Assembly: GCA_001179505.1 (NCBI GenBank)
Contig: CDMY01000586.1
Span: 1-46,866, forward strand
Length of the DNA: 46,866 nucleotides
Direction: 5' to 3'
DNA from: Vitrella brassicaformis CCMP3155
Taxonomy: Eukaryota > Protista > Chromerida
Below are positions 4,459 to 10,976 of this stretch, piece after piece (the stretch's first letter is position 1; every line of letters begins with the position of its first letter). The position numbers and the translations under genes were made by a program. The notes beneath the pieces are model-generated. The model saw only the letters and a list, made by a program, of their open reading frames with translations. It was not told the DNA's origin and did not search any database.

Positions 4459-5565
4459 TTAATATTGATCAGCGGTGGGAGGGGAGCAAAGGACAACCTG
4501 GAGGTGGCGGGCTGTGCGGGGGTGGGACACATCAAATGGATGGACGGACGGATGGACCTGCCCTGGTGCTGTGTGGATGACGTACAAGTAAGGGTGTGTA
4601 TGGTGTACGTGTGTGTGTGTTGTGGGTTCGGTTGAGATGATGATATGTACACATCTGTCTGTCTCACCATCATGCATCATCAATAGCATGACAGGCACGG
4701 CCACCATGACACGGAGAGTAAGGCAAGCCACTCGATCAGCCAGCCAGCCAGCCGTACCTACGTATGCAGCCAGAGAGAGAGAGAGAGAGAGATGGACCGT
4801 TCCGCCTTTGCTGAGTGAGACAGACAGACAGACAGACAGACAGACAGGTAGACAGGGAAGGTACCCACGCACTCACACACGCACCGGCAGTTAGTTCGTT
4901 GGTATGTTTCTATGGTACAGGCAGGCAAGCTTCCTTCCAGGACAAAGGAGCAAAAACCATTCATTCACTCTTATCTCTCTCTGTGTGTGTGCGCGTCACG
5001 TCCACTGTGTGTGTGTGGATATGTGTCCACCCATCCCATCTGGCCGCCTCCCCTGTCGGCTGGTTTGTTGGGACCCGCACCCACACACGCACACACGCGC
5101 ACGTGCACATTCACATGATGCGATTGAGAATGCAAAAACACTCCATCCATTGGAGGAGTGGTCCGGTGTGGTGGGTGTGCTGTGACCTGACTACCCGAAA
5201 TGCGCTCTCTCTCTCTGTCTCCGCCTGTCTGTCTGCTGTCGCCCACACGCACTTCCACACATGCAGACACAGACAGCGATGGATATCTAGATAAAGCACA
5301 CGCAATCAGTCAATTCTCTCTCATCACAGACAGACACGGAGGCAGGCAGGCAGCCCACACCAGACACCAAGAAAAGCATCTCAATGTATAATCCATCCAT
5401 CCATCCAGAAGGGGGGCAAAAATGGCTTCACACCACCCACCAGCCAGCAGCCCGGGAGCTCATCCGCAATCCAAAAGAAAACAAAACAAAACGGAACAAA
5501 ACAAATAAGAAACATACACAGAGAGGGAGAGAACGAGATACGTCTACCCTCCCTAGTACGGTCGC

Positions 5566-8500
5566 TCAGCCGAAGAAGCCCCGCCTCTCCGGCTTCTGCT
5601 GCTGCTGGTTCTGGTTGTTGGAGGGGTCGCCTTGCTGCTGCTGCTGTGGCGAGGCTACAGGAAAGGGCCCAGCTCCGCCCACCTGCTGTCGGTGAGTGGC
5701 GAGGTCCTGCCAGCTCTGATCCATCGGGGAGGGAGGGTACCGGATAATCCCAGGGGCTTGCTGGGCGGGGTACCCGAACATGGGCGCATTGTGTGCCTGA
5801 GGGTGGGGGTGGTGGGGGTAGTAGCTCGGCCGCATTGTCGGATTGGGATTGGGATTGGGCTTCTGCCGCCGCGCGCTGCGGGACGGCCACACCCGGTTGA
5901 GGCCGGTGAGCAGCCACTTGTCGAACCCCGCAAACACGAAGACTAAAACGGTGCCGACTAGAGCCACGAGGGTGTAGCCGAGGCTGGTCATGGCGTCGTT
6001 CAGCCCATGGCCCGCCTGAATGCCAAAGGCCTGAGCGCGGCTGACGATCTCTGCCCCATACTGGGGCTGGACGCCGCCGAGCCACACCAGCAGAACGCCC
6101 ACCAGCCCGAAGAGGGACGAGTAGAGGACATGCCCAGTGCGTGAGAAGTAGACAGAGCCGGCGATGGACGCGATGACGGCGCAGAGGTATCCGAGTAGAG
6201 TGAGGTCTTTGCGCAGGATGGTGTTCCAGCAGGCCGGCGTGACGTCGTCCCTCCACCACTTGTCGATGACCTTGGGCAGCAGGGCCTCGCCGATGGTGTG
6301 CTTGGACGACTTGGCCGAGGCCGCCTGGATGAACCGCTCGCCGGTCGATATGGCCGCCTTGCGGAAGCGCCACCAAATGAAGTAGGATGAAACAGCCGAC
6401 TGCACACAGACAGACACACACACATACATACAGGGGGGCAGCGCCATGGCTGTGGGTGTTGGTTACCGACCTTTAGCTCGGCGAGTGCTTGGTCTAGGGG
6501 CACTTGCACGATATCCTTGAGGGCCTCCACGTTGCGCTGGTCGAGCGCCCTCTCCCGCTGCTCCAGTCTCAGATGCAGATCACGCAAACCCTGGTTACAC
6601 GGAACACACACCACACACGCCACACAGGCAAAGATGAAGCGGGCAAAAAGCACTCTGGTGGGCAGAGATACTCACCCTGTTCCATGCGGACGAGTTGGCG
6701 CAGTAGAGCAGTGCGAAGGCGGCGTCTGCGGCCTCCCTGCCCCTGTCGAAGTGCTCCTTGAGCGTGTGGTCCTCGACGGGGAAGACCACACCCTTCTGGA
6801 TTATCCCCTCGAACTCGTGCTCCAGCTGATGCATCTTACGCTGACCACACACACAGATACACAGAGAGAGGCTGCTCGCTGGTGTGTGGGTGTGTGGGTC
6901 TTGGGGTGTGTGTGGTTGGTTACCTCGGCGTTGTCTTCGCATCGTTTCTCCCAGTTGGCTTCTACGGTTTTGGTGCCCTTCTGGACGATCTTGTCGAGGG
7001 TGGCGCGCCAGTCCCTCATGTAGGGGTGGCCGTGCAGGCCTCCGAGCTCGCTGTCAAAGGCACCCCGCGACGCATCACTCAACCCCTGCACACACTCACA
7101 CACGAACGGACACACACACAGATGTGGGATGGCTGTGGTGAGGGATGGCTGTGGGTGACTGTTTACTTGTATTTTGCTGTTGAGGTCATCCAGTGAGATG
7201 TCCAGACTGCTGGGCTTCACCTCGGTAAACACCTTATCCGCCCGAGCCTGAGCTGCCACACACACACACACACACACGCAAACACACGCAAAAACACACA
7301 CATGTCGGTCACTCTCTCTGCTGGTCCCTCTCTCTCTCTTTCCCTATTCCCCTGCACCACACCTACCTCTGTCGACGGCCTTCTGCGTGATCCTGCTGTT
7401 ATTCCGCGATATCTCGTTGATGTGCGCCTTGGTGATCTGCTCGAAGCTCGCCAGGCTCGACTTACAGCACTGGCTGTCGGTGAAGTTGGGGTGCTCCGCC
7501 CTCAGCGACTCGAACAGCTTGGCCGTCGCCTCGTCCCTGGCCTCGTTGGCCGCCTTGTCAAGCGCATTGGGCGTGAGCGGCAGCGTGTCGTGGATGTCGT
7601 CCATCTGTTCCATGAAGGACCGGAAGTGGACGCTCTTCCACCGCTCGCAGTGGTCGGTGAGGGTGCGGCAGTTCTGCTGCTGCAGGCTGCGCATGGCCTT
7701 GTGTATGTCGGCCTTGAGCTTGTCGCTGGCGTCTTTGGAGTACTGCTCCAGCCCCTTGGTCAGCCGCCAGAAGACCAGCATGACACTTGTGCGGACCCGC
7801 TCGTGCTGCTTGTCGAACTCGTCGTCGTACAGCGGCCGGGTGCCGTTGATGGCCTTCATTATCTCGGTCTCGTACTTGCGCAGCATGTCGTTCTTGGTCA
7901 TGGACACCTGCAGCTGAGCGTACTGGTCCCACAGCGAGCTCGGCGGCTTCGGCTGCGCATCCTCTGACCGAGATGCCGCCACCAGGAACTTGACCAGGTC
8001 AGCCAGATCGGCGCCGCTCATTTTGCGCTCCTCGCTCTTGGTCTTGGGGAAGCGGCTCGCGTCCGCTATCAGCCGCTCGCGGAACTGCCTCATTTCCTCG
8101 ACAAAGGCGCGCTCGAATGCCGCCTCGTCGGCCTGGTCGAGACGGCTCAGCGCGGAGGCGTCACCGCTAGGCGGTGGGAGCGTGACGCAGTCGACTCGCG
8201 AGAAGAGGTCTGAGATGGAGCCGTTCTTGCCCTCCCTGTTGCGGTTGTCGATGAGCTCCTCCAGCCAGCGGCGGGAGCTGCGGCCGTTGAGATCCTGAAC
8301 GAAGTCCTGCACCACCCACGTCAGGCCCGAGGGCTTCAGCGACTCCACCAGATCGGCCACCGAGCTGTTGGCGAACGTGTGGGCGCGAACACCAAACAGC
8401 TGACGATGAACCACATTCACACACACGGACACACACACACACACACATAATGGCCATGAGGAACATTCTGCATGTGGGTGTACACGCGCCCCGCCGACCC

Positions 8501-9155
8501 AGCGACCGACCGACCTGCGATCTACGTGTGAGGAATTCCAGGTAGTCGAGTGCGTTTTGGTCGATGAGTTTGACCGAGTTGTAGACGACCTCCGACGAGA
8601 GGAGCGTGGCGACCGAGAAGACCTTGCTGTCGTAGTCTGCCGTGATGTTGGGGCCGTAGAAGCCCTCGGTGTCCAGGAAGAGGATGCTGGTGCCGTTGAC
8701 GTCTATCGGCTCGGACCACCACCACAGCCCGCTCGTCTTGGGGTCCACGGTGTAGCCCAGCTCAAACCCTCGACGCTCACCTGAAAGACAGACACAAATG
8801 CGACACACACACACGACAGAAACTGCGAGAAGAGGCCATGTTTTCGCCCCATGCTGCATGGCTGTGTCCGCTTCGTCTCATCCTGACTGTCTGATCATCC
8901 CTGTGGCCCACCACCGTAGGTACCCAGTAGCTGATTGAGGAGGAAGCTCTTGCCGCTGTGGATGGCTCCGACGACCGACACAACGGCGATGGGCGCCGGC
9001 ACCTGCTTGAGCCTGTCGACATTGGTCCGATTGATGAGCAGCTGCGTGTGGCTCTCGTCGGGGTAGATCAGCTGCAGCGGCTCCCCGGACGCATCGCAGG
9101 CAATGACGAGAGAGGCTAGCGACACACAGATGCGTAGCAATAGGGCTGCTCTCAT
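5566..9155 (-). CDS. Guanylate-binding protein / atlastin-superfamily GTPase with N-terminal signal peptide, helical stalk, about 3 C-terminal TM helices and a P/Q-rich tail
   Basis: P-loop VVGAIHSGKSFLLNQLL, G2 region GYTVDPKTSGLW, G3 LFLDTEG, and WVVQDF. About 8 exons join in frame. Hydrophobic N-terminus MRAALLLRICVSLASLVIACDA. Confidence 0.88.
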
Positions 9156-9486
9156 CCTGGCTGCTCACATCCAAGGAAAACAAAAACCAAAGTGGCAGCT
9201 GCCGAGACGAACGTTTACAAGGGGGATCGGGGCAATGGCCCTTTGACCTTTCCGTGCACTTGTTCCGACGGGAAGGAAAATAAAAACAGGCACACGAGTC
9301 AACTGAAGCTCAACATGGGTGTGGACATGCAAACCGCTAGCGAGTGCCCTCCCTCCCAGTTCACCCGTGTCCCTCATGCAAAGGGGAGAAGGGAGACGAG
9401 TCATTCAAAATTGTCGACTCTCATCCATCAGCACACAAGCAGTGAGGCGCTCGCGCCTCCAATTGGGCTGATTTGTATGTCGGGCA

Positions 9487-10976
9487 TCAATCGACACATC
9501 GAAACCAGACAGCACCACCCACTGGCCAGCTGACACCACCCCTTACACCACCACCGTCCGTCCCCCTGTTGATGACGTCACGCTTGAGGGAAGGGTCGCA
9601 GCACCCACGGCACGCCAACGGGGCATCCATCGACTGCGGGAAGCGGTCGGCGAGCGGCTCAGACCGATCACCAACAGGTCCTCGGTCGTGGACAGAATTC
9701 ACAACACCGCCCAACCCAACCGCCAGGTGGGTCTCGCCCGGTCTGTGGCCGCTCAGAATCACACGACGATGGTCATCGGCATCAGCAGCATTCAGATCGT
9801 CCCCATCGCCGCGATCTTCGACAGCGATGCCCAAATCCTCTGGGATGCCCGATGTCAGCACGGCCATAGCGGGGGTCACCACTGCCGATGTGTGCAAGGA
9901 GCACCCTCCTCTGAACCCTTCCCTGTTCATCGAGGGTGATGTCGGTCGGTCACCAGAAAGCGTCCTCTAATAGAAAGGCGCTGAGGGAAAGGGGAAGGGG
10001 AGGGGGACGTACCGGGGATGGTCATTGCCTGAAAGTGCACACACACACATGCACATCCATCCATCCATCCACGTAGCCGTGAGTGGGTCACCAAGCCATG
10101 CACAGCTCTCTCCCTTTGCACACTCGATCAAATCAAACTGTCCCCCTCCTTTACGTAGCGGCCGGATGATGGTGAGGCGTATGGGGCGCCCCGGGCGGTC
10201 GCCCTTGCCCGCAAGACCCTCGCTCACGGGCAGGGCCTCATCGATGGTCTTGTCTTGAAATCGGTAAAGTGCATCGCCCATGTACCCCTCCGGGTAATAA
10301 GGGCTCTTCTTGATCATCGCCTTGAAGTCATTGGTGCACGTGCCGGCTCTCACATCTACGGGGAAAGGTTGTAGGCTTCGGCCGCTCTCCTCGACTAGCA
10401 CCACCCACTTCCGAAGCATCTTTCGTGGGTTGGAGCTGGGAGGAGGAGGAGCTTTCGGAAGCAAGTCCGCCAGCCAATCTCCTAGCTTCGAGCCAGCGGG
10501 GAGCTGCTGAGTGCCGGGACGGGGGCGGGCGGGAGAGGCAAGTTGCTGCGGCCGCGACGCAGTAATAGGGGAGGGGCCGATGAACGATGCTGGATCAGCA
10601 AGGGGCTGCACACACACATCACACACACACACACGTAGACGAGTCCACGTGCGCTCTCGTGTGCTCTGCCTGCCCCAGATGCCCGTGGGTGTATGTGTGC
10701 GGCCGGCGCTGCTGCCTGTCAGCTGACCTGTGTGCTGCTGTGTATGCCCTGCGTGGACAGCGTGAATAAGGCAAACAGCAGGGCAAACAAACTCTGCAGG
10801 AAACCCATATGGACGCAGTGACGAGAAAGATCCAATCACGATTTCGCCGCTCTGGGCGTCGATGGAGCGAATCGATGACCTATCGACGCGCCGGGCCGGA
10901 CATGACAGCGCTACTGAAGACAAGAACAACGGCCATACATATCGGTGCGTTGTGCTGGCGTGCTGCCTTTCGCTCT
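9487..10976 (-). CDS. Left copy of the ubiquitin-like-domain gene, probably continuing into an uncharacterised 3' exon (9487-9890)
   Basis: ORF 9967-11262 contains KWVVLVEESGRSLQPFPVDVRAGTCTNDFKAMIKKSP...LYRF...GKGDRPGRPIRLTIIRP. The downstream ORF 9487-9930 is protein-like. The exact splicing is unresolved. Confidence 0.5.

What the first reader, a model, noticed from the sequence alone, without database searches (positions are those of the whole stretch)
5566..9155. A GBP/atlastin-type GTPase predicted to face the secretory lumen
Established knowledge: GBPs and atlastins act with a cytosolic GTPase domain. Seen in sequence: this one starts with a signal-peptide-like segment (MRAALLLRICVSLASLVIACDA-SG). 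It has at least nine N-glycosylation sequons before the membrane region (NRT, NGT, NIT, NSS, NGS, NGT, NFT, NNS, NSS). About three TM helices follow, then a P/Q-rich tail. The P-loop GxxxxGKS and DTEG are intact, and the usual RD motif reads QD. Inference: a luminal or extracellular dynamin-superfamily GTPase, possibly acting in the ER, alveoli or the periplastid compartment of a complex plastid.
Basis: partly seen in the sequence, partly recalled or inferred. Interest (0 to 1): 0.7.

Follow-up and report, generated by a model that had tools for sequence, protein, structure and literature searches.

The report
Signal-peptide-bearing membrane GBP-like GTPase
This Vitrella gene encodes one member of an old, eukaryote-wide group of GBP-like GTPases whose conserved signal peptide and membrane anchors predict a GTPase head inside the ER/Golgi; that would be unprecedented for this superfamily, but it has never been properly tested.

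Summary
An 8-exon, all GT-AG gene on the minus strand (9155..5566) encodes a 965-aa protein identical to the annotated Vitrella brassicaformis protein P0002. It has an N-terminal signal-peptide-like segment, a GBP large-GTPase domain, a ~450-aa helical stalk, three hydrophobic helices and a P/Q-rich basic tail. All nine sequons are present.

It is not a one-off. About 90 homologues form one clade, including Dictyostelium GBP, Toxoplasma TGME49_304990, gregarines, Chromera and invertebrates, with plant GBPL2-like proteins as sister. Most carry the signal peptide, a C-terminal anchor, His in place of the GBP arginine finger, and WVVQDF. The literature already notes "signal peptide + TM" for DdGBP and AtGBPL2, so this is a new member of a known kind.

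On topology:
- Flanking charges at both ends, family-wide, predict a luminal GTPase and a cytosolic tail (p about 1e-12 and 1e-9).
- The sequon argument fails family-wide (observed/expected 0.80).
- There is no conserved cysteine pair.
- The one conserved sequon lies in the predicted G-G dimer interface.

The Toxoplasma orthologue is assigned to the ER or Golgi and is strongly fitness-conferring. I put luminal orientation at about 0.55-0.6. A periplastid or alveolus-specific role is unlikely.

The parts
5566..9155 (-). Whole coding region: 8 exons, 965 aa. It equals the annotated Vitrella protein P0002.
   Evidence: Exon borders are supported by RNA-like contigs.
9090..9155 (-). Signal-peptide-like segment, residues 1-22 (MRAALLLRICVSLASLVIACDA). 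It has a basic n-region, a 12-residue hydrophobic core and small residues at -3/-1.
   Evidence: An equivalent segment is present in 63 of 87 homologues. An in-frame TGA lies 12 nt upstream.
8924..9089 (-). Rest of exon 1: start of the large GTPase domain (PLQLIYP strand) and the P-loop GAIHSGKS at 8946-8969. His66 occupies the arginine-finger position.
   Evidence: Pfam GBP PF02263 E = 5e-7. Alignment to human GBP2. His is invariant in 68 of 68 clade members.
8515..8780 (-). Exon 2: switch I (Thr93), G3 DTEG (8662-8673), and the conserved sequon N122-I-T just after it.
   Evidence: Pfam GBP E = 5.9e-18. Conservation. Residues 118-123 lie in the predicted dimer interface.
7367..8399 (-). Exon 3: end of the G domain with G4 TWVVQDF (QD at 8304-8309), then the first part of the helical stalk.
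6471..7252 (-). Exons 4-7 (7252-7167, 7085-6924, 6840-6676, 6590-6471): the remainder of the long all-helical stalk. Introns are rich in (TG)n.
   Evidence: The model is helical with pLDDT mostly above 85.
6073..6204 (-). Hydrophobic helices 1 and 2 (residues 754-772 and 779-797), separated by the short loop YFSRTGH.
5926..5982 (-). Hydrophobic helix 3 (residues 828-846).
   Evidence: The preceding flank is acidic or neutral and the following flank is basic.
5566..5925 (-). P/Q/N-rich, net basic (+7), predicted disordered C-terminal tail (residues 847-965), plus the stop codon at 5566-5568.
   Evidence: pLDDT below 50.

Best explanation
The gene encodes the Vitrella orthologue of a eukaryote-wide clade of signal-peptide-bearing, membrane-anchored GBP-like large GTPases. 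Other members are Dictyostelium GBP and Toxoplasma TGME49_304990, and plant GBPL2-like proteins are sister.

Shown here:
- It has a GBP-type large GTPase fold.
- G1, switch I, G3 and the G4 aspartate are near-invariant across the clade.
- His replaces the arginine finger and Gln replaces the Arg of the RD motif.
- A roughly 450-aa helical stalk follows, then three hydrophobic helices and a basic disordered tail.
- The gene is spliced and expressed as modelled.

Inferred:
- The N-terminal segment is a cleavable signal peptide.
- The protein is threaded into the ER so that the G domain and stalk face the ER/Golgi lumen. Helices 1-3 span the membrane and the P/Q-rich tail stays in the cytosol.
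- The G domain binds guanine nucleotide and pairs head-to-head through the canonical GBP/atlastin interface. Catalysis is altered and probably slower.
- It would therefore act as a nucleotide-dependent luminal tether or scaffold of endomembranes, not as a cytosolic fusogen. ER fusion is likely covered by the separate Sey1/RHD3 gene in this genome.
For: Identity and model:
- Pfam GBP matches on exons 1-3.
- Human GBP2/GBP1 match at E = 1e-28 to 1e-25, atlastins at 1e-8.
- AF2 model has pLDDT 80.7. Its large GTPase domain matches the hGBP1/GBP5 domain at TM 0.83-0.90 and rmsd 2-3 A.

Clade:
- 127 homologues at E <= 1e-3.
- Dictyostelium GBP matches at 1e-72, collinear over 758 aa.
- Toxoplasma TGME49_304990 matches at 5e-45 plus 4e-17, collinear through the TM region.
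- In the tree, signal-peptide-bearing proteins form one clade with 99% support. Vitrella sits in a 100%-supported myzozoan/gregarine group.

Topology signals:
- 63 of 87 homologues have a signal-peptide-like N-terminus.
- The hydrophobic core has a median of 15 aa. C-flank minus N-flank charge is negative in 55 and positive in 4 (p = 1.7e-12). At the last TM, charge after minus charge before is positive in 41 and negative in 3 (p = 1.6e-9).
- Myzozoan relatives keep three helices, with a basic loop 1 and a basic tail.

Nucleotide machinery is conserved in at least 90% of members.

Homodimer model: ipSAE 0.46 against a best control of 0.02. That mark was reached by 21 of 30 solved homodimers and 0 of 23 solved monomers. 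The runs agree in at least 90% of contacts and pLDDT is 82. The interface covers the P-loop, switch II and G4. This result may come from the model's memory of solved GBP dimers.

The Toxoplasma orthologue:
- hyperLOPIT assigns it to 'ER 1' with probability 1, and its CRISPR score is -5.5 (PMC7670262).
- It was recovered in the GRA-BirA* BioID tables (four supplementary files). These baits travel through the secretory lumen and also label BiP and signal peptidase.
- It localised to the Golgi on C-terminal tagging (PMC4981711).

The Vitrella genome holds a separate Sey1/RHD3 hit and a classical GBP with an Arg finger and RD motif.
Against: - No dynamin-superfamily GTPase is known to work in the secretory lumen, and no luminal GTP supply is known (established knowledge; my literature search found nothing).
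- Sequons are not enriched family-wide: ratio 0.80, equal to the reversed control motif.
- There is no conserved cysteine pair. Cys237 is also present in cytosolic human GBPs.
- The only conserved sequon (N122) lies in the predicted G-G interface, where a glycan would clash.
- The authors of the DdGBP study read their proteinase K assay as showing a cytosolic G domain (PMC12040241).
- My reading of that assay differs. GFP placed before the signal peptide would mask it. C-terminal GFP is cytosolic in both models, exactly like their calnexin-GFP control. The assay therefore does not discriminate.
- SignalP 5 calls no signal peptide on the annotated Toxoplasma N-terminus.
- The BioID lists also contain cytosolic contaminants.
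- I could not run SignalP or DeepTMHMM.
Confidence: 0.55

Rival explanations
1. Atlastin-like topology. The G domain and stalk are cytosolic. The N-terminal hydrophobic segment is an uncleaved second anchor or is not used, and helices 1-2 form an atlastin-type hairpin. The protein tethers or fuses ER/Golgi membranes from the cytosolic side using cytosolic GTP.
For: - Every characterised GBP, atlastin and Sey1 works this way (established knowledge).
- Helices 1 and 2 are only about 6 residues apart, as in atlastin.
- GTP-binding residues are under strong constraint.
- Sequons are not enriched and there is no conserved disulfide pair.
- The conserved N122 sequon sits in the predicted dimer interface.
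- The DdGBP authors conclude cytosolic exposure.
- The plant GBPL2 work treats it as an ATL1 counterpart acting with nuclear GBPL3.
Against: - The family-wide charge bias at both ends is the opposite of what this topology needs.
- The N-terminal cores are too short for a membrane span, with a median of 15 aa.
- A third helix followed by a strongly basic tail is conserved in myzozoan relatives.
- Flanks before the TM are acidic, unlike tail-anchored proteins.
- The genome already has a Sey1/RHD3 gene.
- The DdGBP assay cannot tell the two models apart (my reading).
- ATL1 and SEY1 did not replace GBPL2 unless ATL1's putative NES motif was replaced with that of GBPL2.
Confidence: 0.3
2. Luminal or exoplasmic pseudo-enzyme. 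The protein is translocated as predicted, but the G domain no longer cycles GTP. It serves as a nucleotide-independent structural module, for example a spacer or a receptor.
For: - The arginine finger is replaced by His and the RD arginine by Gln throughout the clade.
- GTP is not known to be available in the lumen.
Against: - The P-loop G/K/S, switch I Thr, DxEG and the guanine-contacting Asp198 are 90-100% conserved over deep divergence. This argues for continued nucleotide binding.
- His66 itself is invariant, which suggests a retained catalytic or binding role.
Confidence: 0.1
3. Targeting to a chromerid-specific compartment (periplastid space, plastid or alveoli). Alternatively, a gene-model artefact in which the signal peptide is not the real N-terminus.
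For: - Vitrella has a complex plastid and alveoli.
- The 5' end of the transcript was not resolved by the contigs.
Against: - Only about 5 residues separate the signal-peptide end from the first G-domain strand, so there is no transit-peptide-like region.
- The clade is present in organisms without plastids or alveoli.
- The Toxoplasma orthologue is assigned to the ER or Golgi.
- An in-frame stop lies 12 nt upstream of the ATG.
- The same N-terminus appears in the annotation and in gregarine and other orthologues.
Confidence: 0.04

Closest known systems
Dictyostelium discoideum GBP (gnbp, DDB_G0281639, Q54TN9; P0135)
   Same: [quoted passage not shown]
- His in the P-loop and the WVVQDF motif.
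- A long helical stalk and a C-terminal membrane anchor.
- 27% identity, collinear over 758 aa, E = 1e-72.
- ER localisation is reported for it (PMC12040241).
   Different: - DdGBP has a single C-terminal TM with a 6-residue tail. It lacks the three helices and the 119-aa P/Q tail.
- Its authors assign a cytosolic G domain, using an assay that in my reading does not discriminate.
[quoted passage not shown]
   Same: - Same myzozoan lineage, H-type P-loop, WVVQDF motif and conserved GPN[IV]T sequon.
- Three C-terminal helices and a basic tail.
- Collinear alignment into the TM region.
   Different: - It is 1281 aa, with large low-complexity insertions in the G domain and a 38-aa extension before its N-terminal hydrophobic segment.
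- Experimental data exist for Toxoplasma only: ER by hyperLOPIT, Golgi by tagging, CRISPR score -5.5.
Plant GBPL2 clade (AtGBPL2, At2g38840; grass and Closterium relatives P0152, P0155)
   Same: - The literature describes an N-terminal signal peptide plus three C-terminal TM helices, with ER or tonoplast localisation (PMC12489281, PMC12034427).
- They are sister to the His-type clade in my tree, with 99% support for the joint clade.
   Different: - They keep the arginine finger.
- They are about 600 aa, with a short stalk.
- They carry C-terminal NLS/NES motifs.
Human GBP1/GBP2/GBP5
   Same: - Large GTPase fold (TM 0.83-0.90), P-loop, switch I Thr, DTEG and G4 Asp.
- A helical domain follows the G domain.
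- The predicted head-to-head G dimer is the same.
   Different: - Human GBPs are cytosolic, with no signal peptide and no TM. They attach to membranes through CaaX prenylation.
- They have the Arg48 finger and the RD motif.
- Their stalk is much shorter.
Atlastin-1/3 and Sey1/RHD3
   Same: - They are membrane-anchored GBP-superfamily GTPases of the ER.
- They have two closely spaced TM helices after a helical middle domain.
   Different: - Sequence similarity is only distant, E about 1e-8.
- They have no signal peptide, an even number of TMs, and both ends in the cytosol.
- Vitrella has its own Sey1/RHD3-type gene elsewhere.

Membership tests
GBP family (Pfam PF02263, large GTPase domain) | Profile match above the curated cut-off, and the large GTPase fold | tested here: met
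   Exon 1 scores 29.6 bits and exon 2 scores 65.4 bits, against a cut-off of 21.1. Foldseek gives TM 0.83-0.90 and rmsd 2-3 A to the hGBP1/GBP5 large GTPase domains.
GBP family (Pfam PF02263, large GTPase domain) | G1 GxxxxGKS, switch I Thr and G3 DxxG | tested here: met
   GAIHSGKS (residues 63-70), Thr93 and DTEG (114-117) align to the human GBP2 motifs. They are conserved in at least 90% of the clade.
GBP family (Pfam PF02263, large GTPase domain) | Catalytic arginine finger in the P-loop (R48 of hGBP1) and the (T/L)RD G4 motif | tested here: not met
   His66 aligns with the finger Arg. VQD aligns with LRD, so the Asp is kept and the Arg is not. Both changes are clade-wide.
Signal-peptide-bearing membrane GBP-like clade (DdGBP / TGME49_304990 type) | N-terminal signal-peptide-like segment directly before the G domain | tested here: met
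   Residues 1-22 have a 12-aa core, N-flank charge +3 and C-flank charge -4. 63 of 87 homologues share the feature.
Signal-peptide-bearing membrane GBP-like clade (DdGBP / TGME49_304990 type) | C-terminal TM anchor(s) with a basic segment after the last helix | tested here: met
   Three helices and a +7 tail. In the family, 41 of 44 informative members are more positive after the last TM than before it.
Signal-peptide-bearing membrane GBP-like clade (DdGBP / TGME49_304990 type) | Phylogenetic placement inside the clade | tested here: met
   Quick IQ-TREE of 90 rows gives 99% SH-aLRT support for the signal-peptide clade and 100% for the 7-row myzozoan group that holds Vitrella.
Signal-peptide-bearing membrane GBP-like clade (DdGBP / TGME49_304990 type) | Actual cleavage of the signal peptide and luminal location of the G domain | not testable with these tools
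   There are sequence predictions only. The published DdGBP protease assay is ambiguous, and the Toxoplasma BioID hit is indirect.
Atlastin | Close sequence relationship to the atlastin G and middle domains | tested here: not met
   Atlastins match at E = 1e-8 to 1e-6, against 1e-28 for GBPs.
Atlastin | Cytosolic N-terminus without a signal peptide, exactly two TMs, and a C-terminal amphipathic helix | tested here: not met
   A signal-peptide-like N-terminus and three hydrophobic helices are present, followed by a disordered basic tail.
Sey1/RHD3 | RHD3_GTPase profile (PF05879) | tested here: not met
   This gene gave no PF05879 hit. The only hits in the genome lie on another contig, G000:C422.

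The most novel reading that the evidence does not exclude
The whole signal-peptide-bearing GBP-like clade works with its GTPase head inside the secretory pathway lumen. The clade includes Vitrella, Toxoplasma TGME49_304990 (CRISPR score -5.5), Dictyostelium GBP, invertebrate members and probably plant GBPL2. This would be the first dynamin-superfamily GTPase of the ER/Golgi lumen. It would imply a luminal guanine-nucleotide supply and a luminal membrane-tethering or scaffolding mechanism. The invariant Arg-to-His finger change would be an adaptation to that environment.
Probability: 0.5. Interest if true: 0.85.

Novelty: new member of a known kind. Interest (0 to 1): 0.55.

Why it matters
All studied dynamin-superfamily GTPases act from the cytosol or from organelle spaces with a known GTP supply. 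Here a deeply conserved clade carries coherent signals at both ends of the protein for the opposite orientation.

The few papers that noticed the signal peptide (Dictyostelium, Arabidopsis) assumed or inferred a cytosolic head, without a test that can discriminate. The Toxoplasma orthologue has a CRISPR fitness score of -5.5, is assigned to the ER or Golgi, and is uncharacterised. The question is therefore directly testable in a tractable organism.

If the head is luminal, this opens two problems: how guanine nucleotides are supplied in the lumen, and how a GTPase could tether membranes from inside. If the head is cytosolic, the conserved signal-peptide-like segment needs another explanation.

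For Vitrella itself, the gene is an ordinary, already annotated member of this family.

Tried and rejected
- Sequon enrichment as evidence of glycosylation: rejected. The family-wide observed/expected ratio is 0.80, equal to the reversed motif. Eight of the nine Vitrella sequons are not conserved.
- Conserved disulfides as a luminal signature: none found.
- Transcript 5' end: the single read-laying run did not resolve it. X1 covers exon 1 up to about 9136 but nothing in 9137-9269. The stretch 9250-10027 belongs to the 3' end of the upstream gene, with its intron 10028-10153 spliced.
- Word search with exon 3 alone found only the Gregarina fragment because of its length window. This justified the exhaustive search.
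- Literature search for a luminal GTPase or ER-lumen GTP found nothing.
- One search on a bare number was wasted, and one call failed on a term-length rule.
- Fis1 interaction of the Toxoplasma orthologue: this is a yeast two-hybrid hit in the lowest confidence class, and I gave it no weight.
- The homodimer prediction passed, but it may reflect the model's memory of solved GBP dimers. I use it only to locate the interface.
- SignalP and DeepTMHMM could not be run. I used hydrophobic-core length and flank-charge statistics instead.
- The spliced protein was never typed or sent to a search tool. Exons were searched by reference, and full-length searches used the database entry P0002. The exons were joined only inside a script, to count sequons and hydrophobic windows.
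Full report
**What is in the window**

The finding's coordinates hold a complete eukaryotic gene on the minus strand. Reading the sequence and checking splice sites by script gives eight exons, all with GT-AG introns:
- 9155-8924
- 8780-8515
- 8399-7367
- 7252-7167
- 7085-6924
- 6840-6676
- 6590-6471
- 6399-5566

Together they make 2898 nt, or 965 codons plus a stop. Most introns contain (TG)n/(CA)n runs.

The exhaustive protein search returned a 965-aa database protein, P0002. It is 100% identical over exon 3 at residues 167-510. The word search names it as an unnamed protein of Vitrella brassicaformis CCMP3155, and its longest contig is 46,866 bases, the length of this window. The window is therefore Vitrella, and my model equals the existing annotation.

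The joined coding sequence existed only inside a script, for counting.

**Expression and ends**

Two runs flagged as possible RNA (X1, X2) hold 49-63% of the sampled words. Four DNA runs hold 74-99% and a fifth 31%.
- Contig pieces from X1 and X2 end at 6397 (exon 8 starts at 6399, next to a skipped repeat), 6675-6840 (exon 6), 7367 and 8399 (both ends of exon 3).
- Contigs from the DNA runs X3 and X4 run straight across those borders.
- This is the pattern expected of spliced transcripts, and it supports five of the fourteen exon borders.

The 5' end was not resolved.
- X1 covers exon 1 but nothing between 9137 and 9269.
- The stretch 9250-10027 is transcribed and joined across a minus-strand GT..AG intron (10028-10153) to the upstream gene. 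That gene's reading frames all close within about 100 nt of 10027. So 9250-9960 is that gene's 3' UTR.

Three things fix the start codon:
- An in-frame TGA lies 12 nt upstream of the ATG at 9155.
- The annotation uses the same ATG.
- Orthologues have the same kind of N-terminus (see below).

Every item is present.
- The N-terminus is MRAALLLRICVSLASLVIACDA|SG.
- The nine sequons are exactly those listed, at residues 42, 106, 122, 177, 225, 351, 471, 499 and 642.
- Three hydrophobic windows lie at 754-772, 779-797 and 828-846.
- A 119-residue P/Q/N-rich tail follows.
- Pfam GBP (PF02263) matches exons 1 and 2 above the cut-off and exon 3 just below it.
- Alignment to human GBP2 places GAIHSGKS on the P-loop, Thr93 on the switch I threonine, DTEG on G3, and TWVVQDF on VWTLRDF.

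His66 sits where GBPs and atlastins have their catalytic arginine finger.

Nine sequons against a shuffle mean of 4.45 (sd 1.95) gives P = 0.023. This is a mild excess for a single protein.

**It is a family, not a curiosity**

The exhaustive search with exon 3 found 127 proteins at E <= 1e-3. The word search with P0002 added named ones, and a cluster look-up named more.

| Group | Members found |
|---|---|
| Amoebozoa | Dictyostelium discoideum GBP (P0135), Polysphondylium, Pelomyxa, Mastigamoeba, Mayorella |
| Myzozoa | Chromera (two proteins), Gregarina, Blabericola, Cardiosporidium, Theileria equi, Toxoplasma gondii (P0046, 1281 aa) |
| Animals | Echinoderms, Nematostella, tick, mite, millipede |
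| Green lineage | Mesostigma, Diphasiastrum; GBPL2-like proteins of a grass and of Closterium |

Among 87 full-length homologues with a recognisable P-loop:
- 63 start with a signal-peptide-like segment.
- 76 have His at the finger position.
- 55 have a C-terminal hydrophobic anchor.

Many of those without a signal peptide begin exactly at the conserved PxQL strand. That looks like truncated gene models.

In a quick IQ-TREE of 90 G domains, all signal-peptide-bearing proteins fall in one clade with 99% SH-aLRT support, apart from classical Arg-finger GBPs without a signal peptide. The plant GBPL2-like proteins (Arg finger plus signal peptide) branch first within it. Vitrella sits in a 100%-supported group of seven with gregarine and other myzozoan sequences.

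Pairwise comparisons confirm the relationships:
- Dictyostelium GBP aligns collinearly over 758 residues, E = 1e-72.
- Toxoplasma P0046 aligns through the G domain (5e-45) and then through the stalk into the three helices (4e-17).

The Vitrella genome also encodes:
- a classical GBP (GLYRTGKS, FLWVLRDF) with no signal peptide visible, on contig C385;
- a Sey1/RHD3-type gene on contig C422.

**What the literature already says**

The architecture has been noticed twice.
[quoted passage not shown] - Another paper treats GBPL2 as the plant counterpart of atlastin-1 (PMC12034427).

The one topology experiment is the proteinase K digestion of GFP-DdGBP and DdGBP-GFP, read by its authors as cytosolic exposure. 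In my reading it cannot decide the question:
- GFP placed in front of the signal peptide would mask it.
- A C-terminal GFP after a single TM is cytosolic in a type I protein. This is exactly how their calnexin-GFP control behaves.

**Sequence evidence on topology**

I could not run SignalP or DeepTMHMM, so I measured the classical determinants over the family.

At the N-terminus:
- The hydrophobic cores are short, with a median of 15 residues (IQR 13-17). That is signal-peptide length, not TM length.
- The N-flank is positive (mean +1.8) and the C-flank is negative (mean -0.85).
- The difference is negative in 55 proteins and positive in 4 (sign test p = 1.7e-12).

At the other end:
- The 15 residues after the last TM are more positive than the 15 before it in 41 proteins, against 3 (p = 1.6e-9).
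- This is the reverse of tail-anchored proteins, whose basic residues precede the anchor.

In Vitrella and its myzozoan relatives, three helices are conserved, with a basic first loop, a neutral second loop and a basic tail.

Both ends therefore independently predict the same picture: stalk and G domain on the luminal side, tail in the cytosol.

These proteins are representatives at below 50% identity. They are still related to one another, so the p-values overstate independence.

**Evidence that cuts the other way**

- The sequon argument does not generalise. Over 79 His-type proteins, sequons number 259 against 324 expected from composition. The reversed control motif gives 258.
- Of the nine Vitrella sequons, only N122-I-T is conserved (36 of 67 homologues; it appears as NVS in the family consensus).
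- That residue lies in switch II. The homodimer model places residues 118-123 in the head-to-head interface, where a glycan would clash. The model scored ipSAE 0.46 against a best control of 0.02. That mark was reached by 21 of 30 solved homodimers and 0 of 23 monomers, the runs agree in at least 90% of contacts, and pLDDT is 82. The result may come from the model's memory of solved GBP dimers.
- There is no conserved cysteine pair. Cys237 is conserved (63 of 68) but also exists in cytosolic human GBPs, and Cys417 is present in only 35 of 68.
- No luminal GTP supply is known (one search found nothing; otherwise my own knowledge).
- Yet the nucleotide-binding residues are 90-100% conserved. The domain must therefore meet guanine nucleotide wherever it sits.

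**Experimental hints from Toxoplasma**

P0046 is TGME49_304990. In the hyperLOPIT atlas (PMC7670262):
- It is assigned to 'ER 1' with TAGM-MCMC probability 1.
- It has four TMHMM helices.
- SignalP 5 predicts no signal peptide on its annotated N-terminus, where the hydrophobic segment is recessed by 38 residues.
- Its CRISPR phenotype score is -5.5, which is strongly fitness-conferring.

In the parasitophorous-vacuole BioID study (PMC4981711):
- It appears in four supplementary tables of hits for BirA* fused to dense-granule proteins. These baits travel through the secretory lumen and label BiP and signal peptidase.
- It was among the 15 BioID hits the authors chose to localise. Their stated selection criteria included a SignalP 4.1 signal peptide.
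- It localised to the Golgi on C-terminal tagging.

This is compatible with a lysine-bearing luminal domain. The lists also contain cytosolic contaminants, so the support is modest. A lowest-confidence yeast two-hybrid hit with Fis1 adds nothing.

**Structure**

The AlphaFold model built on a 64-sequence alignment has mean pLDDT 80.7.
- The G domain and a continuous all-helical stalk to about residue 750 are confident.
- The three helices are less confident.
- The tail is disordered.

Foldseek ranks human GBP5, GBP1 and GBP2 first, with atlastin-1 interleaved from rank 6. The large GTPase domain aligns at TM 0.83-0.90 and rmsd 2-3 A.

**Verdict**

What it is: a GBP-type large GTPase (not atlastin-type, not Sey1-type) of the signal-peptide-bearing, membrane-anchored clade. 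I hold this with high confidence.

How it most likely works: as a type-I-like ER/Golgi membrane protein whose G domain and stalk face the lumen and whose basic tail is cytosolic. It would bind guanine nucleotide and pair through the canonical G interface, with a His-based and probably slower catalytic site. It would act as a luminal tether or scaffold. I put the luminal orientation at about 0.55-0.6 and the atlastin-like cytosolic alternative at about 0.3. The functional reading is inference only.

The periplastid and alveolar suggestions are unlikely for three reasons:
- There is no transit-peptide-like spacer.
- The clade predates and extends beyond alveolates.
- The Toxoplasma orthologue is in the ER or Golgi.

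For this window, the gene is a new member of a known kind. The open and testable question concerns the whole clade.

Noticed in passing
G000:C385:302725-303626 (locus L001, minus strand): A second Vitrella GBP gene of the classical type. It has P-loop GLYRTGKS (Arg finger kept), FLDTEGLG and FLWVLRDF (RD kept). It has a Pro-rich N-terminal stretch and no signal-peptide-like segment in the exon seen. Both GBP types therefore coexist in this genome.
   Followed up: partly
G000:C422:23467-23792 (loci L006, L007): A Sey1/RHD3-type GTPase hit (PF05879, 67.6 bits). Vitrella probably has a dedicated ER-fusion GTPase besides the gene studied here. A weaker third GBP-profile hit lies at G000:C198:72204-72320.
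   Followed up: no
window 5391-5408 and 10054-10071: Short (TGGA)n / (CCAT)n microsatellites. Reads pile up there (depth up to about 3400 in bin 9925-10121), and many contigs break or make false joints between the two sites. The repeat appears to be very common in this genome.
   Followed up: partly
window 9250-10154: The upstream minus-strand gene has a last intron at 10028-10153 (GT..AG), seen spliced in the RNA-like runs. Its 3' UTR of about 700 nt ends near 9250-9270. At most about 95 nt remain for the intergenic spacer, promoter and 5' UTR of the GBP-like gene.
   Followed up: partly
proteins P0011, P0129, P0131-P0134, P0136-P0138 (unnamed metagenomic and Logan proteins; P0138 is from a mite): A subclade ends exactly at a C-terminal segment of the type GILAxIxGFxEYLLSFIGF, with no residues after it and an acidic residue inside it. 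It looks more like an amphipathic helix or a GPI-type signal than a plain TM anchor.
   Followed up: no
window 8662-8650 region (residues 118-124, GPNIT) and the family alignment A1: The sequon right after DTEG is conserved as N-[IV]-[ST] in about half of the clade, including Toxoplasma (GPNVT) and Dictyostelium (SSNVS). It lies in switch II, in the predicted dimer interface. Whether it is a glycosite or a catalytic or structural motif is unexplained.
   Followed up: partly
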